Virus record (IMG/VR): IMGVR_UViG_3300048927_000250
Span: 1 to 64,000 of that record
Reading direction: 5' to 3' (one strand)
Length of the DNA stretch: 64,000 nt
Position numbers and translations under genes: made by a program. This document shows, in pieces, positions 6,437-13,335 of the stretch. Below the pieces are notes generated by a model. It ran no database searches. It was not told the origin of the DNA and saw nothing but the letters and a program-made list of their open reading frames with translations. Within the stretch, counting starts at the first letter, position 1; each line of letters opens with the position of its first letter.

Positions 6437-7399
6437 ATGTTCATTGACTTGAGCTGGACAGACCTGAACAGCGTAGCAACCAAGCTGGAGATTTTTCGTG
6501 GAGATGCACCACTTGACCGCCTAAACCTCCCGAGTACTCCAATTGCCACGCTTACTAACGGTGAGACGTCGTACCGCGACGAGTCTAACATTCTTCTGGG
6601 GAAAGACTACTACTACGTGTTCGTGAACACCACGGCCACTGACCGCATCGTGTCCCAGAACTACAAAATCAACGCCGTTACCCGTCGTGGCCCCGGTCCA
6701 CAGAAACTGAAACAGGGTGACAACAGTCTCGGGTACTTTGGGACCATTCAGTCCGGTGAGTTCGTTAACGGTTCCGAGTTCGTTGATTTAACCGGCGTGA
6801 AGAACTTTGCGTCAGGGGTAGCGGTCTTGAACCCGTTCCCGATTTGGCACAAGTTCGTTCGTAACAACAAGGTGTTGATTATTCCAGAGGGACCCATTGC
6901 CAGCACGGCAAGTTGGTTACAGTTGTACCAGGCAGGGATGGTTTACGGTACGGATGACAACGGTCCGATGCCACCTGCCGCCCCAGTAAAACAGTCTGCG
7001 AAAATCACCATCGGTAAGGATGTTTTTCGTGTCCGCTTGCTTAAAGGGATGACGGACCAGGCCTATACGGATTACCCCGCCACCGTACTGACCCCTAACG
7101 AGTGGAACGACCTGGTTTATCCACTGGGTCATGCGGTGCCCGCTGACCAGCGCCTGGAAAACATTTATCTCAACGGGAAGTCGACCTCTGCTATCTGTGG
7201 TGCGGGCAATACGAGCGGGTTCAGCCTGGTCCAGGAACTCGCCACGATTTCGTCAGCCAGCGCCCGCGGACAAGCCGTCAGCAATGACGACACCGCCGCC
7301 GACACCAGCGCGTACATCGCCTCCCGCACTACCGTAACAACCAGCTCAGCGAGTGCTTCGTATTACTGGTACCCCGTGTTAGAATTGGTTGAGGGTTAA
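6437..7399 (+). CDS. Virion structural paralog, type B1'
   Basis: Closest to 3310..4275 (PLD..NL..P..TLTNGET, WHKFVR, QLYQAG..GTDDNGP, WYPVLEL). Confidence 0.7.
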   Translation: MFIDLSWTDLNSVATKLEIFRGDAPLDRLNLPSTPIATLTNGETSYRDESNILLGKDYYYVFVNTTATDRIVSQNYKINAVTRRGPGPQKLKQGDNSLGYFGTIQSGEFVNGSEFVDLTGVKNFASGVAVLNPFPIWHKFVRNNKVLIIPEGPIASTASWLQLYQAGMVYGTDDNGPMPPAAPVKQSAKITIGKDVFRVRLLKGMTDQAYTDYPATVLTPNEWNDLVYPLGHAVPADQRLENIYLNGKSTSAICGAGNTSGFSLVQELATISSASARGQAVSNDDTAADTSAYIASRTTVTTSSASASYYWYPVLELVEG

Positions 7400-7403
7400 T
7401 GTC

Positions 7404-8318
7404 ATGTCTATTCGTATCGCCTTTACTAATCCTAATAATGCTGACACCATTAAGGTTTACCGCGCAACCAGTAAAATTGAGTTGTCAGCCCTTCCTGACC
7501 CAATCGCCACCTTAGCGGGAACAGCCACATCGTTCTCTGATGTTACTGCTGCGCGTAACACCGTGTACTATTACGTTATCGGTAGCTACAAGGGTGACGA
7601 CGTCATCTTCACGCAGAACCAACAATACGGTTACTTCCCGGACACCGGTCCTGGACCGTCTAAACTGTTGCGTGGGAACTGGAACGAAGGGTACTTCGGA
7701 ACCTGTACGCAAGCTGAATTGTTTGCCGCGCAAGAACTGTGTACCGCGTTAGGTTACGTCCCCAACGGTGCGGTCAACACCACGGCGTCCAATGTCTGGC
7801 ACAAGTTTATCCTGGATGGGAAAATCCTGTTTATCCCGGATTTATGTATGGCAGCAGATGGTTGGTTATACATCTACCGCGCTGGCTTGGTGTACGGGGT
7901 AGACGGTTACGGGGACCGCCCGGCGTCGTTTTCTGGTGGTAACTACAACCAAAAGAAAACAGTGACTAAGAACAACCGTACCTACCTGGTCCGCCTCATG
8001 AAGGCCACTGCTGCGCCAACGTCGGAGCTGGTGACCGACCTGACGAATGGCGACGCACGCTGGGGTGAGGGTGAGTGGAACCGCACGATGGGACGGTTGG
8101 GTTGTGGTACGTACAACTTTAGTACGCGCTCACGCCTGGGTAACAAACCGGTATACAGCACCAATAACACCCTCTTCACCGGTGCCTTGACGCAGCACAT
8201 GACGGCTAACGGAACCATCGTTCAAATGTTCGCCACGCTTGCATCAGATGTGCCAAGTACCGTGGCCTGGTCCAGTAACTACTACAACTGGCGTCCCGTA
8301 CTGGAACTCCAACTGTAG
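7404..8318 (+). CDS. Virion structural paralog, type B2'
   Basis: Closest to 4279..5157 (ALP.P..A.LA, D.TA..NT.Y.Y.I, DTGPGP..L.RG.W). Confidence 0.7.
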   Translation: MSIRIAFTNPNNADTIKVYRATSKIELSALPDPIATLAGTATSFSDVTAARNTVYYYVIGSYKGDDVIFTQNQQYGYFPDTGPGPSKLLRGNWNEGYFGTCTQAELFAAQELCTALGYVPNGAVNTTASNVWHKFILDGKILFIPDLCMAADGWLYIYRAGLVYGVDGYGDRPASFSGGNYNQKKTVTKNNRTYLVRLMKATAAPTSELVTDLTNGDARWGEGEWNRTMGRLGCGTYNFSTRSRLGNKPVYSTNNTLFTGALTQHMTANGTIVQMFATLASDVPSTVAWSSNYYNWRPVLELQL

Positions 8319-8325
8319 AGACAGC

Positions 8326-8356
8326 AAAAAAAAAGGAGGGCTTTCGCCCTCCTTTA
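8326..8356. terminator. Bidirectional terminator between convergent gene blocks
   Basis: A run, then AAAGGAGGGC-TTTC-GCCCTCCTTT. Confidence 0.8.
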
Positions 8357-8370
8357 TGCCCGTTTGAAAC

Positions 8371-8399
8371 AAAAAAAAAGAAGGAGCCGAAGCTCCTTC
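8371..8399 (-). terminator. Rho-independent terminator
   Basis: On the - strand: GAAGGAGC-TTCG-GCTCCTTC followed by a T run. Confidence 0.8.
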
Positions 8400-8429
8400 A
8401 AAAGGTATGATAATGCGGCAATGCAGTTG

Positions 8430-8693
8430 CTACATAGAAGTACGTTGAAGGATGGTCTGTACCGGGGCCCGAATAGCCGAGATACCCTCAACGAGATTTC
8501 TGTACGTAACTTCCAGCTCTTCCAACGTTACCGTTGTAACTGGAACAGTGCCTTGTGTTGTTGACTTCACGACCATCACTGCTTGACGGTAATTAGTCAA
8601 CCCGCTCATTGTGGGTTCGCTCACGGACACGACCGAACAAGCGTCGAAGAAGTACACGCCAGTAGCCGTTTCCACGCGGATGACTTTCTCCAT
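8430..8693 (-). CDS. Hypothetical small beta-rich protein
   Basis: ORF from MEKVIRVET; weakly resembles the N-half of 8593..9096; overlaps it by about 100 nt. Confidence 0.45.
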   Translation of the reverse strand: MEKVIRVETATGVYFFDACSVVSVSEPTMSGLTNYRQAVMVVKSTTQGTVPVTTVTLEELEVTYRNLVEGISAIRAPVQTILQRTSM

Positions 8694-9096
8694 CGAAACG
8701 CGGGTCGTGATTTTCTTCAGCCAGTGTTGCAGGGATTGCTTGCACTGGTTCAACCGGGATACTAAGGTTTGCATAGGCTGCCTCGTCGTGTTCAATTTGA
8801 CGCTTCTTCTCAGCAGACATGGTCGAACGTACCAGCTCTGTCGCCATTTCGCTTTTATAGTACATGCAAATGGAATTGTTCGCCTTGCTCCGTGGACCGA
8901 AGTTCAGCACCCACAAGTTCCCTTTACGTTGCTTATTGACAGAGATGCAGGACACGTCGCGCAAATCAATCGACGCCGTACCTCCCAAATCGTCATTGAC
9001 GCTATAGTTGAAATCCACCACCTTTTCCAGGTAGCGTGATTCCATACTGATGCCACACATCTTTAACAGTGATGGTGCCCCAGAGATTTCATCCAT
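8593..9096 (-). CDS. Hypothetical protein
   Basis: ATG at 9096 with GAGG SD, overlapping the stop of the DHH gene. Confidence 0.5.
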   Translation of the reverse strand: MDEISGAPSLLKMCGISMESRYLEKVVDFNYSVNDDLGGTASIDLRDVSCISVNKQRKGNLWVLNFGPRSKANNSICMYYKSEMATELVRSTMSAEKKRQIEHDEAAYANLSIPVEPVQAIPATLAEENHDPRFDGESHPRGNGYWRVLLRRLFGRVRERTHNERVD

Positions 9097-10054
9097 TCTC
9101 AGCCTCACTTGCAGCATGAAGTTCTTTGTTAGCATCGAAGAGCATGGCAGCAAGTGTTTCCGGCGTAATGGCGAAAAACAGCTCCACACCTGCCGCGTTC
9201 GCATGACCACCCCCGCCCAGCTTCTCAGCCAGAAAGCGGACGTTATAGTCTTTTGAACGCAGTGAAACCATCGACCCCATTTTACGATGGAAATAACAAG
9301 CAACCACGTCATATGAATCTTTGATGCGGTCGCAAAGTTCCGAGGTAATAGGGCGGTGACAGTTCACGACAGCCATCTTACCTGAATCGCCAAACGGCCA
9401 TTCGGTCAGACAGTTATCGAGGTGGAATTGAATCTCGACATCTCGTTTTTCCTTCAACGCTTCTGAGGCTTCTTTCACGCCGAGGTATGCCGTGGCACCC
9501 ATGGTCGAGGAGAAGACACCGTCGTTAACCACGCCAACATCGTCGATTAAACGGTTGAACTCAGAGAACGGTTTGTTGAGGAAAAGGATGAAGAACTCGT
9601 AGAAGTCCCGCGAGTCTGGAAGTTTGAACTGCCAGAGGTCACGGTCTTGTACACAAGCGAGTACATAGGGGAGCGGTGTGTCCGGGTACAGATGCGCCCA
9701 GGTCAACCCTGCACCAGAACGTGTTCCGTCTAATGTCAGCTCAACATTAGCAGCACGGAGCACGGCTTGAAACTCTGGGCAGTCCGCTTTTGCATACGCG
9801 TCAACCATTGACGCATGATGGTCGAGGATAACAACGCGAGCAGGCTCTAACTTCGCGAGGTTACTGATTTCCTCAGGCGGTGGTGCAAAATCAACGAAGT
9901 ACAGCGTATCGCCCTGGCCAACTCCTTCTAACGGCAGCGGGGAGTTATAGTGGACTGGTCGGTAAGTTGCGCTCGGTAACGCACGCCACAAAGTTGCAGC
10001 GGCGGCAAATCCGTCGATGCACAGTGCGTGATAAAATACAAAAAAGTTATTCAC
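9089..10054 (-). CDS. DHH/DHHA1-family phosphoesterase
   Basis: Motifs YHxxCxDG, YFVDF, ILDHH, SGA, DRDLW, SLRS and GGGGHxxAAG. Confidence 0.9.
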   Translation of the reverse strand: MNNFFVFYHALCIDGFAAAATLWRALPSATYRPVHYNSPLPLEGVGQGDTLYFVDFAPPPEEISNLAKLEPARVVILDHHASMVDAYAKADCPEFQAVLRAANVELTLDGTRSGAGLTWAHLYPDTPLPYVLACVQDRDLWQFKLPDSRDFYEFFILFLNKPFSEFNRLIDDVGVVNDGVFSSTMGATAYLGVKEASEALKEKRDVEIQFHLDNCLTEWPFGDSGKMAVVNCHRPITSELCDRIKDSYDVVACYFHRKMGSMVSLRSKDYNVRFLAEKLGGGGHANAAGVELFFAITPETLAAMLFDANKELHAASEAENG

Positions 10055-10087
10055 GGTGGACCCCCTGAGATGGGTACGGGATTATAC

Positions 10088-10366
10088 TTAAACGGATAGG
10101 AATTGCTTTGAAGAATCGCGCAGGGCCAGAACGTTAAAGTGACCGCTGCTAATTGTGTTAATGATGAAGAACGCATCCTCAGGCTCCTCTATTATTTTAT
10201 CGCAGTAACGTCTCGGAGTACGGCGAGTGAATCGTGCTTTCATGGAGCGCGCGCACTTCTTTATTTTCCGAGCATTACCATTATTAAAATGATAACAGAG
10301 GGTGATGGTTGAGAGGAAATCAATTATCTCTTCCACTTCCTGATAGTCAAAGTTATTCACAGACAT
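10088..10366 (-). CDS. Hypothetical protein (AT-rich)
   Basis: 92-aa ORF in operon orientation; no recognised motif. Confidence 0.55.
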   Translation of the reverse strand: MSVNNFDYQEVEEIIDFLSTITLCYHFNNGNARKIKKCARSMKARFTRRTPRRYCDKIIEEPEDAFFIINTISSGHFNVLALRDSSKQFLSV

Positions 10367-10431
10367 GAGTACCGCACTTAAAAAATGATTGGGTTAGGGA
10401 ATTGAGTTCCCGATGGGACGGATAAAGGCGG

Positions 10432-10677
10432 TTACCACCGCCGTTTCTTACCCGGAAGATTCCAGCTGGTACCGTTCGAACGGTTAGGGTTTCCGCGCAG
10501 TAGCGCCACCCGTAGGTTGAACATGGGGTCCTTTTTAGCCTGTTCCTCCAGTTTTTGCTGGCGCACATAACGCTGCACTAACTGGTTCGCCACCTGCTTT
10601 ACCTTGTCGCTCACCGGGTCTGGACCCTTCTCAGTGGTGAGGGTGGTAAGTGGTAAATGCTCTTCTTTATTTTCCAT
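10432..10677 (-). CDS. Hypothetical protein with NxxGTxxxP-basic C-tail (copy 4)
   Basis: ATG at 10677 with AAGGGG SD; ends NRSNGTSWNLPGKKRRW. Confidence 0.65.
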   Translation of the reverse strand: MENKEEHLPLTTLTTEKGPDPVSDKVKQVANQLVQRYVRQQKLEEQAKKDPMFNLRVALLRGNPNRSNGTSWNLPGKKRRW

Positions 10678-10951
10678 GTTTACGGTGCCCCTTCTTGCGG
10701 TCTGGTACCGGGTAGGCGAATGTCCCATCCGGATTCGTTTGATAATGACGCCGGGAGTTCTGCGGCATCTTGTCTTTTTTACCTAACCATACAAAGCTCA
10801 TCTTTTCCTCCTTCGATTGCTTTTCTTCAATAGCCGAGATAAGTTCAATAACCTCCGACATCGACATATATTCGATGGCGTCGAGTATCAGTTTCTTATC
10901 GACGACCGAACTTTTGTTTTGCTCGTGGGAAGACCATCGTCCCTTTGGCAT
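10667..10951 (-). CDS. Protein with ribosomal bL12 N-terminal-domain-like segment plus NxxGTxxxP-basic C-tail (copy 3); possible 44-aa short isoform from ATG 10801
   Basis: DKKLILDAIEYMSMSEVIELISAIEEK aligns to E. coli L7/L12 [33 protein letters not shown] SD before 10951 and AAGGAGG SD before 10801. Confidence 0.6.
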   Translation of the reverse strand: MPKGRWSSHEQNKSSVVDKKLILDAIEYMSMSEVIELISAIEEKQSKEEKMSFVWLGKKDKMPQNSRRHYQTNPDGTFAYPVPDRKKGHRKHGK

Positions 10952-11771
10952 TGGTAACCAACTCCTTGCGTTGTTTGCCGTTCACCGTGATGTCACCATT
11001 GACCCGTTGACGCGCTGAACCGAAGGTGTTAAGTAGACTACGGCAACCAGGACTGGAACCGAAGGGGTCAGGGATATCCAACGTTACCGCCTTCACCCCA
11101 CCGTCAAGTTTATCAAGCGAGCGCTTTAGACGCGCACTTGGTTCGTTGGGTCTAATCTCGTTCAGGTACTGACATTGAACGTCCCGGTCAATGGGGTCCA
11201 GTGGCAGGTCGACGTCACGCAACCAGTTAGGTAAAGAGTCAATCTCAACGTTCAGTGCATCGGGGTGACCCTGACGACTTTTCACAACGCCGTACGAGAC
11301 AACCTGTCCGTCAATCATACGCGGCGAGATACTGATTTCGACGTCGGCTTCTTTACGACCCAAGCCTAACTCGTCAAATTCTTTATTCCAGTCTGTCGGG
11401 GTCGGTGCCCGCATCGTAAGAACCTTGAAGCCCGCCGGTTCATTGGCCATCCGTGCTTTAATGCGGTCAAAGAGTTCCTGACCATGGTGATGTTTAGCGG
11501 CGATGTCAGGGTAGTCTGGCATCCGTTCGGCCATCTCAGCCATCATGCGAATCTTCTCTTCACTAAGATGCGGCGCAATCATTTTCAGGAATTGGGCGAA
11601 GTTAGGAATCTGACCGTTGGGGAACAGTGCTGCGTTGGCGGAGACCTTACTGCCATCGAGAGCCCGCTCTAGCGCCGCTTCTATTGCGTCGGGCGAGTAG
11701 CTTACCCCATTGCGATTAGGAACGTTGAGTGAACCAATATTCAACGATACGCCTTTATCTTTCTTTTCCAT
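10896..11771 (-). CDS. Hypothetical protein with NxxGTxxxP-basic C-tail (copy 2)
   Basis: 291-aa ORF ending ELVTNAKGTMVFPRAKQKFGRR. Confidence 0.7.
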   Translation of the reverse strand: MEKKDKGVSLNIGSLNVPNRNGVSYSPDAIEAALERALDGSKVSANAALFPNGQIPNFAQFLKMIAPHLSEEKIRMMAEMAERMPDYPDIAAKHHHGQELFDRIKARMANEPAGFKVLTMRAPTPTDWNKEFDELGLGRKEADVEISISPRMIDGQVVSYGVVKSRQGHPDALNVEIDSLPNWLRDVDLPLDPIDRDVQCQYLNEIRPNEPSARLKRSLDKLDGGVKAVTLDIPDPFGSSPGCRSLLNTFGSARQRVNGDITVNGKQRKELVTNAKGTMVFPRAKQKFGRR

Positions 11772-12127
11772 TATCTTCTTCCTCTGCGTTGTTTGGGTGC
11801 AGGCCAGGCCATAGTCCCGGCGTTGTTCATCATCAGTTCGCGACGGCCATCACTACGTAAACGCTTACCTTCTACCGGCGAACCTAGTTCAGCAATACAG
11901 TCTAAGTTCTCGACCTTGCTGCGTAAACCCCGGGCATACTCCTCAGTATTGGGGAAGAGCCCTTGACTGTGACGCAGTTCCCTGAGCAACGCCCCACCAA
12001 TACTCCCCATCCCAGCCCCAAGAACGACCACCTTCCGTTCCTTAGGGTCAATAACGAATGGGCCTTTCTCCCCGTTTTTAATCGCATCTTTTAACGGGTC
12101 GAGCCAATTCTCTTCTTCGTCCATCAT
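11771..12127 (-). CDS. Hypothetical protein with NxxGTxxxP-basic C-tail (copy 1)
   Basis: GGAGG SD; ends ELMMNNAGTMAWPAPKQRRGRR. Confidence 0.7.
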   Translation of the reverse strand: MMDEEENWLDPLKDAIKNGEKGPFVIDPKERKVVVLGAGMGSIGGALLRELRHSQGLFPNTEEYARGLRSKVENLDCIAELGSPVEGKRLRSDGRRELMMNNAGTMAWPAPKQRRGRR

Positions 12128-12201
12128 TCCTCCAATGAAAATAAAAAAGACAGCCGAGGCAGAGTAGCCCGAAGGCCACCCTACCTACGACCATTCTTCA
12201 C

Positions 12202-12636
12202 TTAGCGCGCGGCCCAGGTACGCTCAACACGACCACGGTTGCGCATGACACGGTCTTCTTGCTCCAGGTCCACGACGCGGCGGCGACGAGAGACATCGGC
12301 AAAGACTTCCGTTGCCACTTCAGGGTCCAGTCGATATTGGTCGACTAAACCGGTAACGGCTTCCAGCTCTGGGTTAGTGTTATCCGCTAACGCGTTCGTC
12401 CGGTGGTCGTCAATCCTTGAGGTGATTTCTTCAAGGTCATGACGGTCCAGAAAACGTTGAGCCTGGCGATGGATTTGAATATCCCTTACGTTGCCGGGGA
12501 CAGATGGTTCGTTGAAAGTTTCGATAACCGCTTTGACGTCATCAACTGGTACACCTTCGTAGGCCGAAATCATGTCATCGGTGAACCCACGTTCATGTGC
12601 AGTTAGGACGCGCTCAGTAATGCTGTTCATTGACAT
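12202..12636 (-). CDS. Hypothetical protein
   Basis: AAGGAG SD, protein-like composition, TATG-type motif upstream. Confidence 0.65.
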   Translation of the reverse strand: MSMNSITERVLTAHERGFTDDMISAYEGVPVDDVKAVIETFNEPSVPGNVRDIQIHRQAQRFLDRHDLEEITSRIDDHRTNALADNTNPELEAVTGLVDQYRLDPEVATEVFADVSRRRRVVDLEQEDRVMRNRGRVERTWAAR

Positions 12637-12912
12637 TGTCGAGACTCCTTAATACAGTGATTGAGTTCATATCCGTATTGGGTGCAGGTGAATAGAGTTT
12701 TAGCTTCCACTTAACTACATAAGTCCAATCGACTCCGTAAAAAATGACTTTAAGGAGTGCAGTGTACGTTTCCCACGGATATGGTGATAAATAACAACGG
12801 TGGTGACAGTGTCAAACATCCCGTGTTAATCATGGTGGTCTTTCCTTTTGTTCGTAACGAATTGAATTAGTAACGTCGCCCGTGTGTCCGGGCGTCCGTT
12901 TAATACGTCTTA

Positions 12913-13335
12913 CTACGACAGGGCTATACCGCCAATTGTCACGTCAGTAAACAACTGACGCTTATCGTCCGGGTAGTGCGCCTCCAAGATGGGGCCGAGA
13001 TACCCGAACAGTGCACAAAGGGTCTTTGCGTGGAACGCTATTTGGTAGCGCTCGTGCAACTTGTAGCCCAGAATGCTACACCCTTCTTGCAAACTATACT
13101 GTCCCCGATAGCACTGACACCAGGTTACCGCGGTAGTAATCCAGTTTGTGTTATCAATGGACAGAATGGGGTTGCCGAGGAGTGGTTTTAACACTCGCGC
13201 GGCAATGACCAGGTCAGGGGAGACAACTCCACCGACCCGTTCGGTAACCAGAGCCAATGGCTCCGGTAGTAGGACTGATAATGGCATCAGGAAATCGTCA
13301 AGCTGGTCATCACTTGACTGCGGGGTAAGAATCAT
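12913..13335 (-). CDS. Hypothetical protein
   Basis: GGAGG SD; ATGA-coupled to the upstream 50-aa ORF. Confidence 0.6.
   Translation of the reverse strand: MILTPQSSDDQLDDFLMPLSVLLPEPLALVTERVGGVVSPDLVIAARVLKPLLGNPILSIDNTNWITTAVTWCQCYRGQYSLQEGCSILGYKLHERYQIAFHAKTLCALFGYLGPILEAHYPDDKRQLFTDVTIGGIALS

What the first reader, a model, noticed from the sequence alone, without database searches (positions are those of the whole stretch)
10432..12127. Four tandem unrelated ORFs share a C-terminal NxxGTxxxP + Lys/Arg tail (candidate targeting tag)
Seen: four consecutive, translationally coupled - strand ORFs with dissimilar bodies (118, 291, 94 and 81 aa) end in RELMMNNAGTMAWPAPKQRRGRR, KELVTNAKGTMVFPRAKQKFGRR, RHYQTNPDGTFAYPVPDRKKGHRKHGK and RGNPNRSNGTSWNLPGKKRRW. 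One carries the bL12-like NTD. Inference: a modular system of variable N-terminal effectors with a common C-terminal address. The tail could be an rRNA/ribosome-binding hairpin, a phage-nucleus import or retention signal, or a packaging tag. Independent precedent exists for phiKZ proteins binding host ribosomes early in infection.
Basis: partly seen in the sequence, partly recalled or inferred. Interest (0 to 1): 0.72.

Follow-up and report, generated by a model that had tools for sequence, protein, structure and literature searches.

The report
Conserved basic tail on jumbo-phage proteins
Three (not four) neighbouring genes of a nucleus-forming Erwinia jumbo phage end in the same strongly basic peptide of about 30 residues; it is far better conserved than the proteins that carry it, it sits on at least seven unrelated proteins in a clade of phiKZ-like phages, and its binding partner (I think RNA or the ribosome most likely) is not known.

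Summary
The window is a PhiEaH1-like Erwinia jumbo phage that encodes chimallin, tubulin and split RNA polymerase. The four coupled minus-strand ORFs exist as described.

- **Three members, not four.** gp093, gp092 and gp091 share a real C-terminal module. Leave-one-family-out profiles recover each left-out family (33, 26 and 18 bits; the best of 2000 shuffles reached 9-14). Profile-profile alignment matches the tails only. gp090 is not a member: its orthologues lack the motif and hhalign gives 0.1%.
- **Conservation.** Across seven related phage genomes the tails are 86-97% identical and the bodies 43-56%, with many synonymous changes.
- **Tail-only genes.** Two genomes keep gp091 as a 44-residue tail-only gene with its own ribosome-binding site.
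- **Distribution.** A search of 1.84 billion proteins, plus tblastn, finds the tail only at extreme C-termini, one to three copies per genome. The carriers are other bodies in OBP, pEt-SU, Survivor, Kc263, N1M2, Sureiya, SXP01 and metagenomic relatives. The general form is R-x-x-[LIV]-x-x-N/G...G...[WFY]-P-x-x-K-x-[KR]-x-G-x-R.
- **bL12 likeness.** The gp091 body matches the bL12 N-terminal domain (E 3e-5; every PDB hit is bL12).

The function is unproven. The tail looks like the working part, a basic hairpin that binds a conserved polyanion, possibly the ribosome, and not a mere address label. A general nucleus-import signal is unlikely. A packaging tag is weakly disfavoured.

The parts
11771..12127 (-). 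gp093-type ORF, 118 aa: acidic body (pI 4.9) with a VVVLGAGxxxG motif, plus the basic tail
   Evidence: no Pfam or PHROG family
11774..11869 (-). Tail of gp093 (last 32 aa, GKRLRSDGRRELMMNNAGTMAWPAPKQRRGRR): 10 K+R against 2 D+E, pI 12. It is the only moderately confident part of the AF2 model, which shows a small beta-hairpin there.
10896..11771 (-). gp092-type ORF, 291 aa: the family found in all tail-bearing phages, with an N-terminal N-x-N-G-x-V-Y motif, a variable middle and the tail
   Evidence: AF2 model uninformative (pLDDT 43)
10899..10985 (-). Tail of gp092 (last 29 aa, VNGKQRKELVTNAKGTMVFPRAKQKFGRR). Its codons also carry the Shine-Dalgarno sequence (AAGGAG, 10962-10967) and the ATG (10949-10951) of the long form of gp091.
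10667..10951 (-). gp091-type ORF, 94 aa: bL12-NTD-like body plus tail. GenBank annotates only the last 66 aa in PhiEaH1.
10817..10903 (-). bL12 N-terminal (dimerisation and bL10-binding) domain-like segment, gp091 residues 17-45, aligned to E. coli bL12 residues 2-30
   Evidence: Pfam Ribosomal_L12_N at 16.8 bits, below the cut-off of 25; 4 of 5 long-form sequences hit, best E 2.8e-4; profile against the PDB finds only bL12 chains, E 3e-5
10670..10783 (-). Tail of gp091 (last 38 aa, GKKDKMPQNSRRHYQTNPDGTFAYPVPDRKKGHRKHGK): 97% identical across genomes. Loci L004 and L005 keep it as a stand-alone 44-aa gene.
10432..10677 (-). gp090, 81 aa: coupled downstream neighbour with a basic ...KKRRW end. 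It is NOT a detectable member of the tail family.
12137..12194 (-). 20-bp stem-loop followed by a U-run, between the gp094 stop and the gp093 ribosome-binding site: a terminator- or attenuator-like element in front of the tail-gene cluster
   Evidence: MFE -35.5 kcal/mol, z -5.1, 0 of 200 shuffles as stable
8332..8399 (-). Two strong intrinsic terminators that close the minus-strand unit (tail genes, DUF7740 gene, DHH phosphoesterase gene and the ORF downstream of it)

Best explanation
**What it is.** A short, autonomous C-terminal peptide module of about 27-35 residues. Its form is a basic arm, a beta-hairpin ending in an aromatic-Pro pair, and a basic ...K-x-[KR]-x-G-x-R end. It belongs to a clade of nucleus-forming, phiKZ-like jumbo phages: PhiEaH1-like and OBP-like. 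It has been moved or duplicated onto at least seven unrelated, mostly acidic bodies. PhiEaH1-like phages carry three tandem, translationally coupled paralogues.

**How I think it works (inferred).** The tail is the working part, not a label. It binds a highly conserved polyanionic partner, most likely structured RNA of the host translation apparatus. The bodies supply oligomerisation or anchoring. In gp091 that body is a captured enterobacterial bL12 N-terminal domain, which could dimerise the tail or dock it on bL10 at the ribosomal stalk in place of the factor-recruiting bL12 C-terminal domain.

**Shown**
- The module is real.
- It is always C-terminal.
- It is under protein-level purifying selection.
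- It is modular.
- Tail-only genes exist.
- The gp091 body is bL12-like.

**Inferred**
- The hairpin, from a low-confidence model.
- The nature of the partner.
- Any effect on translation.
For: **The module is real and modular**
- Profile statistics.
- Tail-only alignment of otherwise unrelated families.
- New bodies in a scan of 1.84 billion proteins, every hit at the extreme C-terminus.
- Cultured phages that carry it: OBP, pEt-SU, Survivor, Kc263, N1M2, Sureiya, SXP01.

**The tail is the functional core**
- Tail identity is 86-97%, body identity 43-56%.
- Codon differences are 289 synonymous against 44 non-synonymous in the gp091 tail, with similar excesses in the others.
- A 44-aa tail-only gene with its own Shine-Dalgarno sequence survives in two genomes.
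- The gp092-type tail stays recognisable from Erwinia phages to Pseudomonas and Shewanella phages, while the rest of the protein diverges to 16-23% identity in the alignment.

**A polyanion-binding character**
- Tails have 9-11 K+R against 1-3 D+E and pI 10.5-12, on bodies of pI 4.9-5.6.
- The tail is the only moderately confident part of the gp093 model (pLDDT 64-80), with a small hairpin.

**A link to the ribosome**
- gp091 residues 17-45 match bL12 residues 2-30. All 10 PDB hits are bL12, and E. coli scores best.
- Virus-encoded bL12 domains and ribosome-binding jumbo-phage proteins are documented (PMC6375957; PMC10914614).
Against: - There is no direct evidence for any partner.
- The bL10 plus 2x gp091 complex prediction gave no answer (score 0.02, partner pLDDT 40).
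- The bL12-like domain is below Pfam's threshold. It is absent outside the PhiEaH1-like group and is lost in 2 of 7 genomes, so it cannot explain the module in general.
- The tail matches no known RNA-binding or ribosomal family in Pfam, PHROGs or the PDB.
- The module is confined to one phage clade, which fits a conserved phage-encoded partner just as well.
- The last 5-8 codons of the gp093 and gp091 tails, and the K-E and N-A codons further upstream in the gp092 tail, double as start signals for the next gene. Part of the conservation could come from that.
Confidence: 0.4

Rival explanations
1. Capsid-packaging tag. The tail docks its carriers inside the prohead, or on packaged DNA, so that they are delivered with the genome. 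It would be a C-terminal analogue of the N-terminal capsid-targeting sequence shared by the variable internal proteins of T4.
For: - The architecture matches: a conserved terminal peptide on hypervariable bodies encoded in tandem. The T4 capsid-targeting sequence is described in PMC3012670, listed.
- In this window the cluster lies about 2 kb from a block of virion genes on the other strand.
- A basic tail could bind DNA.
Against: - OBP_174 and OBP_175 are labelled 'hypothetical protein' in a record that marks 'virion structural protein' elsewhere. I could not read the proteome paper itself.
- The cluster is co-transcribed with a DHH phosphoesterase gene, in a region that holds nucleotide-metabolism-type genes (PhoH, thymidylate synthase).
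- Tail-only genes carry no cargo.
- Paralogue-specific invariance is unlike a generic tag.
Confidence: 0.15
2. Hetero-oligomerisation element. The three paralogous tails bind one another, like a small foldon, so that the coupled genes give one equimolar complex. A tail-only gp091 would then simply fill the third position.
For: - All seven PhiEaH1-like loci have exactly three tandem, coupled tails.
- Each paralogue keeps its own invariant version.
- The tail-only gene is retained.
Against: - Other phages have one or two tails.
- Three tails would bring roughly +8 net charge each together, which is unfavourable without a polyanion.
Confidence: 0.12
3. Phage-nucleus import or shell-retention signal.
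For: The phage encodes chimallin, tubulin and split RNA polymerase, so it very probably builds a nucleus.
Against: - Only 1-3 carriers per genome.
- PCH45, a nucleus-forming relative, has none.
- The import pathway characterised so far reads surface patches on folded cargo, not terminal signals (PMC12908238).
- A bL12-like body points to the cytoplasm.
Confidence: 0.05
4. By-product of gene overlap or a cis-acting signal. On this view the conserved residues reflect embedded start signals, or a nascent-peptide or RNA element that tunes translational coupling, and the mature peptide has no function.
For: The AGAGGAAGAAGA TAATG of gp093, the AAGGAG...ATG inside the gp092 tail and the AAGAAGGGG...ATGG of gp091 all lie in tail codons.
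Against: - The core (N..G..aromatic-Pro) lies outside the embedded signals in gp093 and gp091.
- The three tails differ at the DNA level.
- Synonymous change is abundant.
- The tail is conserved in phages with different downstream genes and in a protein whose next called gene starts about 110 nt after its stop.
Confidence: 0.05

Closest known systems
Capsid-targeting sequence (CTS) of phage T4 internal proteins (IPI, IPII, IPIII, Alt)
   Same: A short conserved terminal peptide is shared by otherwise unrelated, fast-evolving small proteins. Some of their genes are adjacent.
   Different: - The CTS is N-terminal and about 10 residues long. It is removed by the prohead protease and is tied to virion proteins (PMC3012670 and my own knowledge).
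- The tail here is C-terminal and about 30 residues long, strongly basic, and much better conserved than a sorting signal.
- It also exists as a stand-alone gene.
- Its carriers are not marked as virion proteins in OBP.
Virus-encoded bL12 domain proteins (Mizuno et al. 2019, PMC6375957)
   Same: A phage protein carries a piece of ribosomal stalk protein bL12, apparently captured from a host.
   Different: - The published cases carry the C-terminal, factor-binding domain (Pfam Ribosomal_L12), in phages under 80 kb.
- gp091 has only the N-terminal dimerisation and bL10-binding domain. The factor-binding domain is replaced by the basic tail, and the phage is a 215-kb jumbo phage.
phiKZ gp014 (PHIKZ014), a ribosome-binding early protein (PMC10914614)
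   Same: A jumbo-phage protein that binds host ribosomes through charge-based rRNA contacts. It is a precedent for the proposed target.
   Different: - No sequence relation.
- gp014 clamps 5S rRNA with an N-terminal helix and a central domain, and its C-terminus is not involved.
- There is no shared-tail architecture.
Encapsulin cargo-loading peptides and the C-terminal capsid-targeting tail of the HK97 prohead protease (my own knowledge, not tested here)
   Same: C-terminal peptides that dock unrelated cargo inside HK97-fold shells.
   Different: - Those peptides are short, hydrophobic or Gly-rich and degenerate.
- There is no sequence similarity, and no evidence here of encapsidation.

Membership tests
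Ribosomal protein bL12, N-terminal domain (Pfam PF16320), for the gp091 body | Sequence match to the two-helix dimerisation and bL10-binding domain at or above the curated threshold | tested here: inconclusive
   Pfam gives 16.8 bits against a cut-off of 25; 4 of 5 long-form sequences hit, best E 2.8e-4. A profile against the PDB finds only bL12 chains, E 3e-5, covering bL12 residues 2-30. This is homology-level likeness that stays below the curated cut-off.
Ribosomal protein bL12 | C-terminal factor-binding domain (Pfam PF00542) after a flexible hinge | tested here: not met
   No Ribosomal_L12 hit. Residues 52-94 are the basic tail. gp091 is not a bL12; it carries only an NTD-like piece.
Ribosomal protein bL12 | Binds helix alpha-8 of bL10 as a dimer | tested here: inconclusive
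   Complex prediction with RL10_ECOLI plus 2x gp091 scored 0.02 and returned the verdict 'no answer'.
T4-type capsid-targeted internal proteins | N-terminal targeting peptide followed by a prohead-protease cleavage site | tested here: not met
   The shared peptide is at the extreme C-terminus in every one of more than 30 sequences.
T4-type capsid-targeted internal proteins | Carriers are present in virions | not testable with these tools
   There is only an indirect hint: OBP_174 and OBP_175 are not labelled virion proteins in a record that labels others so. The proteome paper is not held.
Chimallivirus nuclear import cargo | Import signal present on the many proteins that must enter the nucleus | tested here: not met
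   There are 3 carriers in 215 kb, 1-3 in five other jumbo phages and 0 in PCH45. Known import is not by terminal signals.
The tail family itself (as defined here by alignments A1 and A6) | Profile match at the extreme C-terminus, conserved in orthologues | tested here: met
   Met for gp093, gp092 and gp091. Not met for gp090.

The most novel reading that the evidence does not exclude
The tails are a family of phage-made, ribosomal-protein-like peptides that each occupy a specific, highly conserved rRNA site on the host ribosome. In PhiEaH1-like phages one of them is delivered to the stalk by a stolen bL12 N-terminal domain, so that part of the factor-recruiting bL12 is replaced by a basic hairpin. 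This would remodel cytoplasmic ribosomes for a nucleus-forming phage. The tail-only 44-residue genes would then be the smallest known phage-encoded ribosome ligands.
Probability: 0.2. Interest if true: 0.85.

Novelty: new variant of a known kind. Interest (0 to 1): 0.6.

Why it matters
**What is new.** Nucleus-forming jumbo phages separate transcription from translation, and they must still control cytoplasmic ribosomes and traffic their proteins. Very few of their small proteins have any assigned role. This work defines a new, sharply delimited peptide module with properties that are unusual for phage accessory genes:
- near-invariance across phages of Erwinia, Pantoea, Klebsiella, Serratia, Edwardsiella, Pseudomonas and Shewanella
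- strict C-terminal placement
- transfer between unrelated bodies
- survival as a stand-alone mini-gene
- fusion to the stalk-binding half of bL12

**What it would give.** Its partner can be found with simple pull-downs. If the partner is the ribosome, this would be a new mode of translational take-over and a compact ribosome-binding tag. If the partner is the capsid or the shell, it would be the first linear sorting signal in this phage group.

**Annotation corrections.** The long form of gp091 should be annotated in PhiEaH1, and the tail-only genes in metagenomic relatives.

Tried and rejected
**Searches that found nothing**
- Pfam and PHROG scans of all four ORFs and of the tails alone found no family, except the weak L12_N hit.
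- PDB sequence searches with the tail profile and the gp092 family profile returned only chance-level hits.
- tblastn of gp092 and gp093 against 50,697 phage records, and IMG/VR scans, found only PhiEaH1 and Ea277G. Relatives came from the large protein collections instead.
- Region-restricted word searches added no new bodies with known domains.
- An ESM Atlas look-alike search for the gp091 tail scored 0.55 or less, which is not informative.

**Predictions that gave nothing usable**
- AF2 models of gp093 (pLDDT 52) and gp092 (pLDDT 43) were too poor for fold searches, so none was run.
- The bL10 plus 2x gp091 complex prediction gave no answer.

**Expression evidence**
- The four runs labelled RNA hold 42-175 kb contigs of a 98.6% relative. 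That is DNA carry-over and shows nothing about expression.
- The OBP virion proteome paper is not held.

**Ideas considered and rejected**
- A DNA repeat: the three tails differ in codons.
- gp090 as a fourth member.
- Recalled resemblances of the tail to bL33, bL34, HU arms and proline-rich antimicrobial peptides. No profile search supported any of them, so I make no claim from them.
Full report
**What the window is**

The region is 99% identical to Erwinia phages PhiEaH1 and vB_Ea277G (genus Iapetusvirus). The 215-kb genome encodes:
- a chimallin shell protein (phrog_4795, E 3e-164; PDB chimallin 7sqt, E 7e-9)
- a tubulin
- a split RNA polymerase beta fragment

It is therefore a phiKZ-like phage that very probably forms a nucleus. 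The published record calls all four ORFs hypothetical proteins (gp090-gp093), and it annotates gp091 in a shortened 66-aa form.

**The observation**

The four minus-strand ORFs are present with the stated lengths and tails. Coupling is real:
- The gp093 stop and the gp092 start overlap as TAATG, behind a GAGGA.
- The ATG of the 94-aa gp091 lies 56 nt inside the gp092 tail, 10 nt after AAGGAG. Those bases are the K-E codons of the tail.
- gp090 starts 11 nt before the gp091 stop.

A 20-bp stem-loop with a U-run (z -5.1) separates gp094 from the cluster. Two strong terminators at 8332-8399 end the unit after the DHH phosphoesterase gene and one further downstream ORF.

**Is the shared tail more than chance?**

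The strict pattern N..GT...P occurs six times in the six-frame translation of the whole genome. Three of those are these adjacent ORF ends.

I found six syntenic metagenomic contigs through gp092 homologues of 35-64% identity. All carry the same cluster.
- A profile of the three tail families from the seven genomes hits exactly three places in the genome, at 68-76 bits. The next best is 9.7.
- Profiles built without one family still rank that family first among 7,723 segments: E 1.9e-7, 7.5e-5 and 5.8e-3.
- Those left-out tails score 33.0, 26.3 and 17.6 bits. The maxima for 2000 composition-preserving shuffles are 9.4, 13.6 and 10.1.
- Profile-profile comparison of the full-length families aligns only the last 24-32 residues: 95.9%, 90.6% and 10.7% probability. 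The bodies are unrelated at that sensitivity.

The fourth ORF fails every test. Its orthologues read RG[ND]PNR....W.....KKK[RH]W without the motif. No profile finds it. hhalign gives 0.1%. Its end is no better conserved than its body.

**Conservation pattern**

| Family | Tail identity | Body identity |
|---|---|---|
| gp093 | 86% | 43% |
| gp092 | 88% | 48% |
| gp091 | 97% | 56% |

These are mean pairwise identities.
- In the gp091 tail, 289 codon differences are synonymous and 44 are not. The other two tails also show a clear synonymous excess.
- The three tails use different codons for the shared residues. Selection therefore acts on the peptide, not on a DNA or RNA repeat.
- Each paralogue keeps its own version in all genomes: ...TMTWPAPKPRRGRR, ...TMVFPRAKQKFGRR and ...TFAYPVPDRKKGHRKHGK.
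- In two genomes (L004, L005) the bL12-like part of gp091 is gone. A 44-residue tail-only ORF remains, with an AAGGAG and an ATG of its own and an unchanged sequence.

**How far the module reaches**

An exhaustive profile search of 1.84 billion representative proteins gave 37 hits at E 0.001 or better.
- The single-stretch hits I examined (16) all carry the tail at the extreme C-terminus.
- Eight of them (P0013-P0017, P0025, P0027, P0028) go beyond the six loci already fetched. Five have bodies unlike gp091-093: P0015, P0016, P0017 and P0025 (109-125 aa) and P0027 (207 aa).
- The multi-stretch hits in long proteins (two read, P0033 and P0041) are repeats of an unrelated N-x-D-G-T motif.

One of these contigs (L008) is a distant phiKZ-like relative that shares many genes with this genome. 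It has the tail genes at a different place, plus a second, more divergent tail on a 250-aa protein.

A weak tblastn hit led to Kosakonia phage Kc263 gp039. From there the trail led to Pseudomonas phage OBP, Edwardsiella phage pEt-SU, Pantoea phage Survivor, Klebsiella phage N1M2, Serratia phages Sureiya and Yubaba, and Shewanella phage SXP01 (the Yubaba match was not read).

In those phages a gp092-like protein of 240-337 aa ends in ...TV[KR]GNGRQKI[IV]DNGK..WP.AK.RKGHR. It keeps the N-terminal N-x-N-G-x-V-Y motif. In OBP, pEt-SU and Survivor it is followed by a 66-85-aa protein that ends in ...RN.Q[VI]R.GK...WP[VI]P[KR].KG.R[YF].

With the wider profile the copy numbers are OBP 2, pEt-SU 3, Survivor 2, Kc263 1, N1M2 1 and this genome 3. 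The nucleus-forming relative PCH45 has none with the narrower profile.

In the broad alignment only the turn Gly and the Pro after the aromatic residue are invariant.

**What the parts look like**

- The tails have 9-11 Lys+Arg against 1-3 acidic residues (pI 10.5-12). The bodies are acidic (pI 4.9-5.6).
- AF2 models are poor overall. In gp093 the tail is the best-predicted part (pLDDT 64-80), with a two-stranded hairpin around the N..GT turn. The gp092 model is unusable.
- No Pfam, PHROG or PDB family matches the tails or the gp092 and gp093 bodies.
- The gp091 body is the exception. Residues 17-45 align with residues 2-30 of bL12, the dimerisation and bL10-binding domain. All ten PDB hits are bL12, E. 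coli scores best (E 3e-5), and Pfam stays below its cut-off.
- Published phage bL12 genes carry the other, factor-binding half (PMC6375957).

**Interpretation**

Three facts argue that the tail is the functional core and not an address on variable effectors:
1. It is the conserved part.
2. It survives alone.
3. The paralogues keep distinct invariant versions, whereas sorting signals are usually degenerate.

The extreme positive charge and the probable hairpin suggest binding to a polyanion. The gp092-type tail stays recognisable in phages of quite different gamma-proteobacterial hosts, while the rest of the protein is only 16-23% identical in the alignment. That points to a very conserved partner. 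The bL12-NTD fusion makes the ribosome the most attractive candidate. Jumbo-phage proteins that bind ribosomes are known, though by unrelated means (PMC10914614).

This remains an inference. The one complex prediction I could run (bL10 plus two gp091) returned no answer. The bL12-like piece is confined to one subgroup.

**Rivals**

- *Packaging tag in the manner of the T4 capsid-targeting sequence.* It fits the architecture. It is weakly disfavoured by the OBP annotation, by the operon context and by the tail-only genes.
- *Mutual binding of the three tails.* It would explain the constant trio and the tail-only gene. It does not explain phages with one tail, or the charge.
- *General nuclear import signal.* It is unlikely given 1-3 carriers per genome and published evidence that import does not use terminal signals.
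- *Embedded start signals.* They explain at most a few tail codons: the last ones in gp093 and gp091, and the K-E and N-A codons in gp092.

**Verdict**

The finding is real for three ORFs and extends well beyond this phage. The function is open. I rate it a new variant of a known kind, namely a shared terminal peptide on unrelated phage proteins. I found no sequence relative outside this phage clade in the libraries searched, and no description of the module in the papers searched.

Noticed in passing
window 12137-12194 (- strand): A 20-bp stem-loop followed by UCUUUUUUAUUUU lies between the gp094 stop and the gp093 ribosome-binding site (MFE -35.5 kcal/mol, z -5.1). It may be a terminator or attenuator that sets the tail-gene cluster apart from gp094.
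   Followed up: partly
window 12202-12636 (- strand), gp094: This 144-aa protein is 86% identical on average among five phages whose neighbouring gp092 and gp093 bodies are 43-48% identical. It ends in a basic ...RVERTWAAR, has no family, and is a candidate phage-encoded partner of the tails.
   Followed up: partly
window 8332-8355 and 8380-8399 (- strand): Two strong intrinsic terminators (8-10 bp GC-rich stems with T-runs) lie where the minus-strand unit meets the plus-strand virion-gene block.
   Followed up: no
window 10088-10366 and 9089-10054 (- strand): A DUF7740 protein (E 9e-10) and a DHH/DHHA1 phosphoesterase sit directly downstream of the cluster, in the same orientation and conserved in synteny.
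   Followed up: partly
own genome outside the window: C1:171049-173019 (-), 181534-181998 (-), 157893-158270 (-): Chimallin (nuclear shell protein), a PhuZ-like tubulin and a split RNA polymerase beta fragment are present, so this Iapetusvirus has the hallmark genes of nucleus-forming phages.
   Followed up: yes
window 11771-12127; alignment A2: gp093-like bodies share a h-h-h-G-A-G-x-x-x-G motif that resembles the first strand-loop of a Rossmann fold. They are only about 80 residues long and match no Pfam family.
   Followed up: partly
window 10896-11771; L019:2371-3153, L021:2204-2965, L022:1622-2611: The gp092 family keeps an N-terminal N-x-N-G-x-V-Y motif from PhiEaH1-like to OBP-like phages, while the middle of the protein is not alignable.
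   Followed up: partly
window 10867-10951: The PhiEaH1 RefSeq annotation starts gp091 at an internal Met (66 aa). That cuts off the bL12-like helices. The Ea277G record and four orthologues support the 94-aa form, which starts inside the gp092 tail.
   Followed up: yes
runs X5-X8 laid on window 7200-13199: Four small runs labelled as metatranscriptomic RNA-Seq contain 42-175 kb contigs of a 98.6% identical phage. This is evidently phage DNA in RNA libraries.
   Followed up: partly
L021:2965-3252 (Klebsiella phage N1M2) and the genes after the tail genes in OBP, Kc263 and Survivor: In OBP-like phages the tail genes are followed by several small membrane proteins. In N1M2 the next gene is a lipoprotein-like ORF (LLSSC lipobox).
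   Followed up: no
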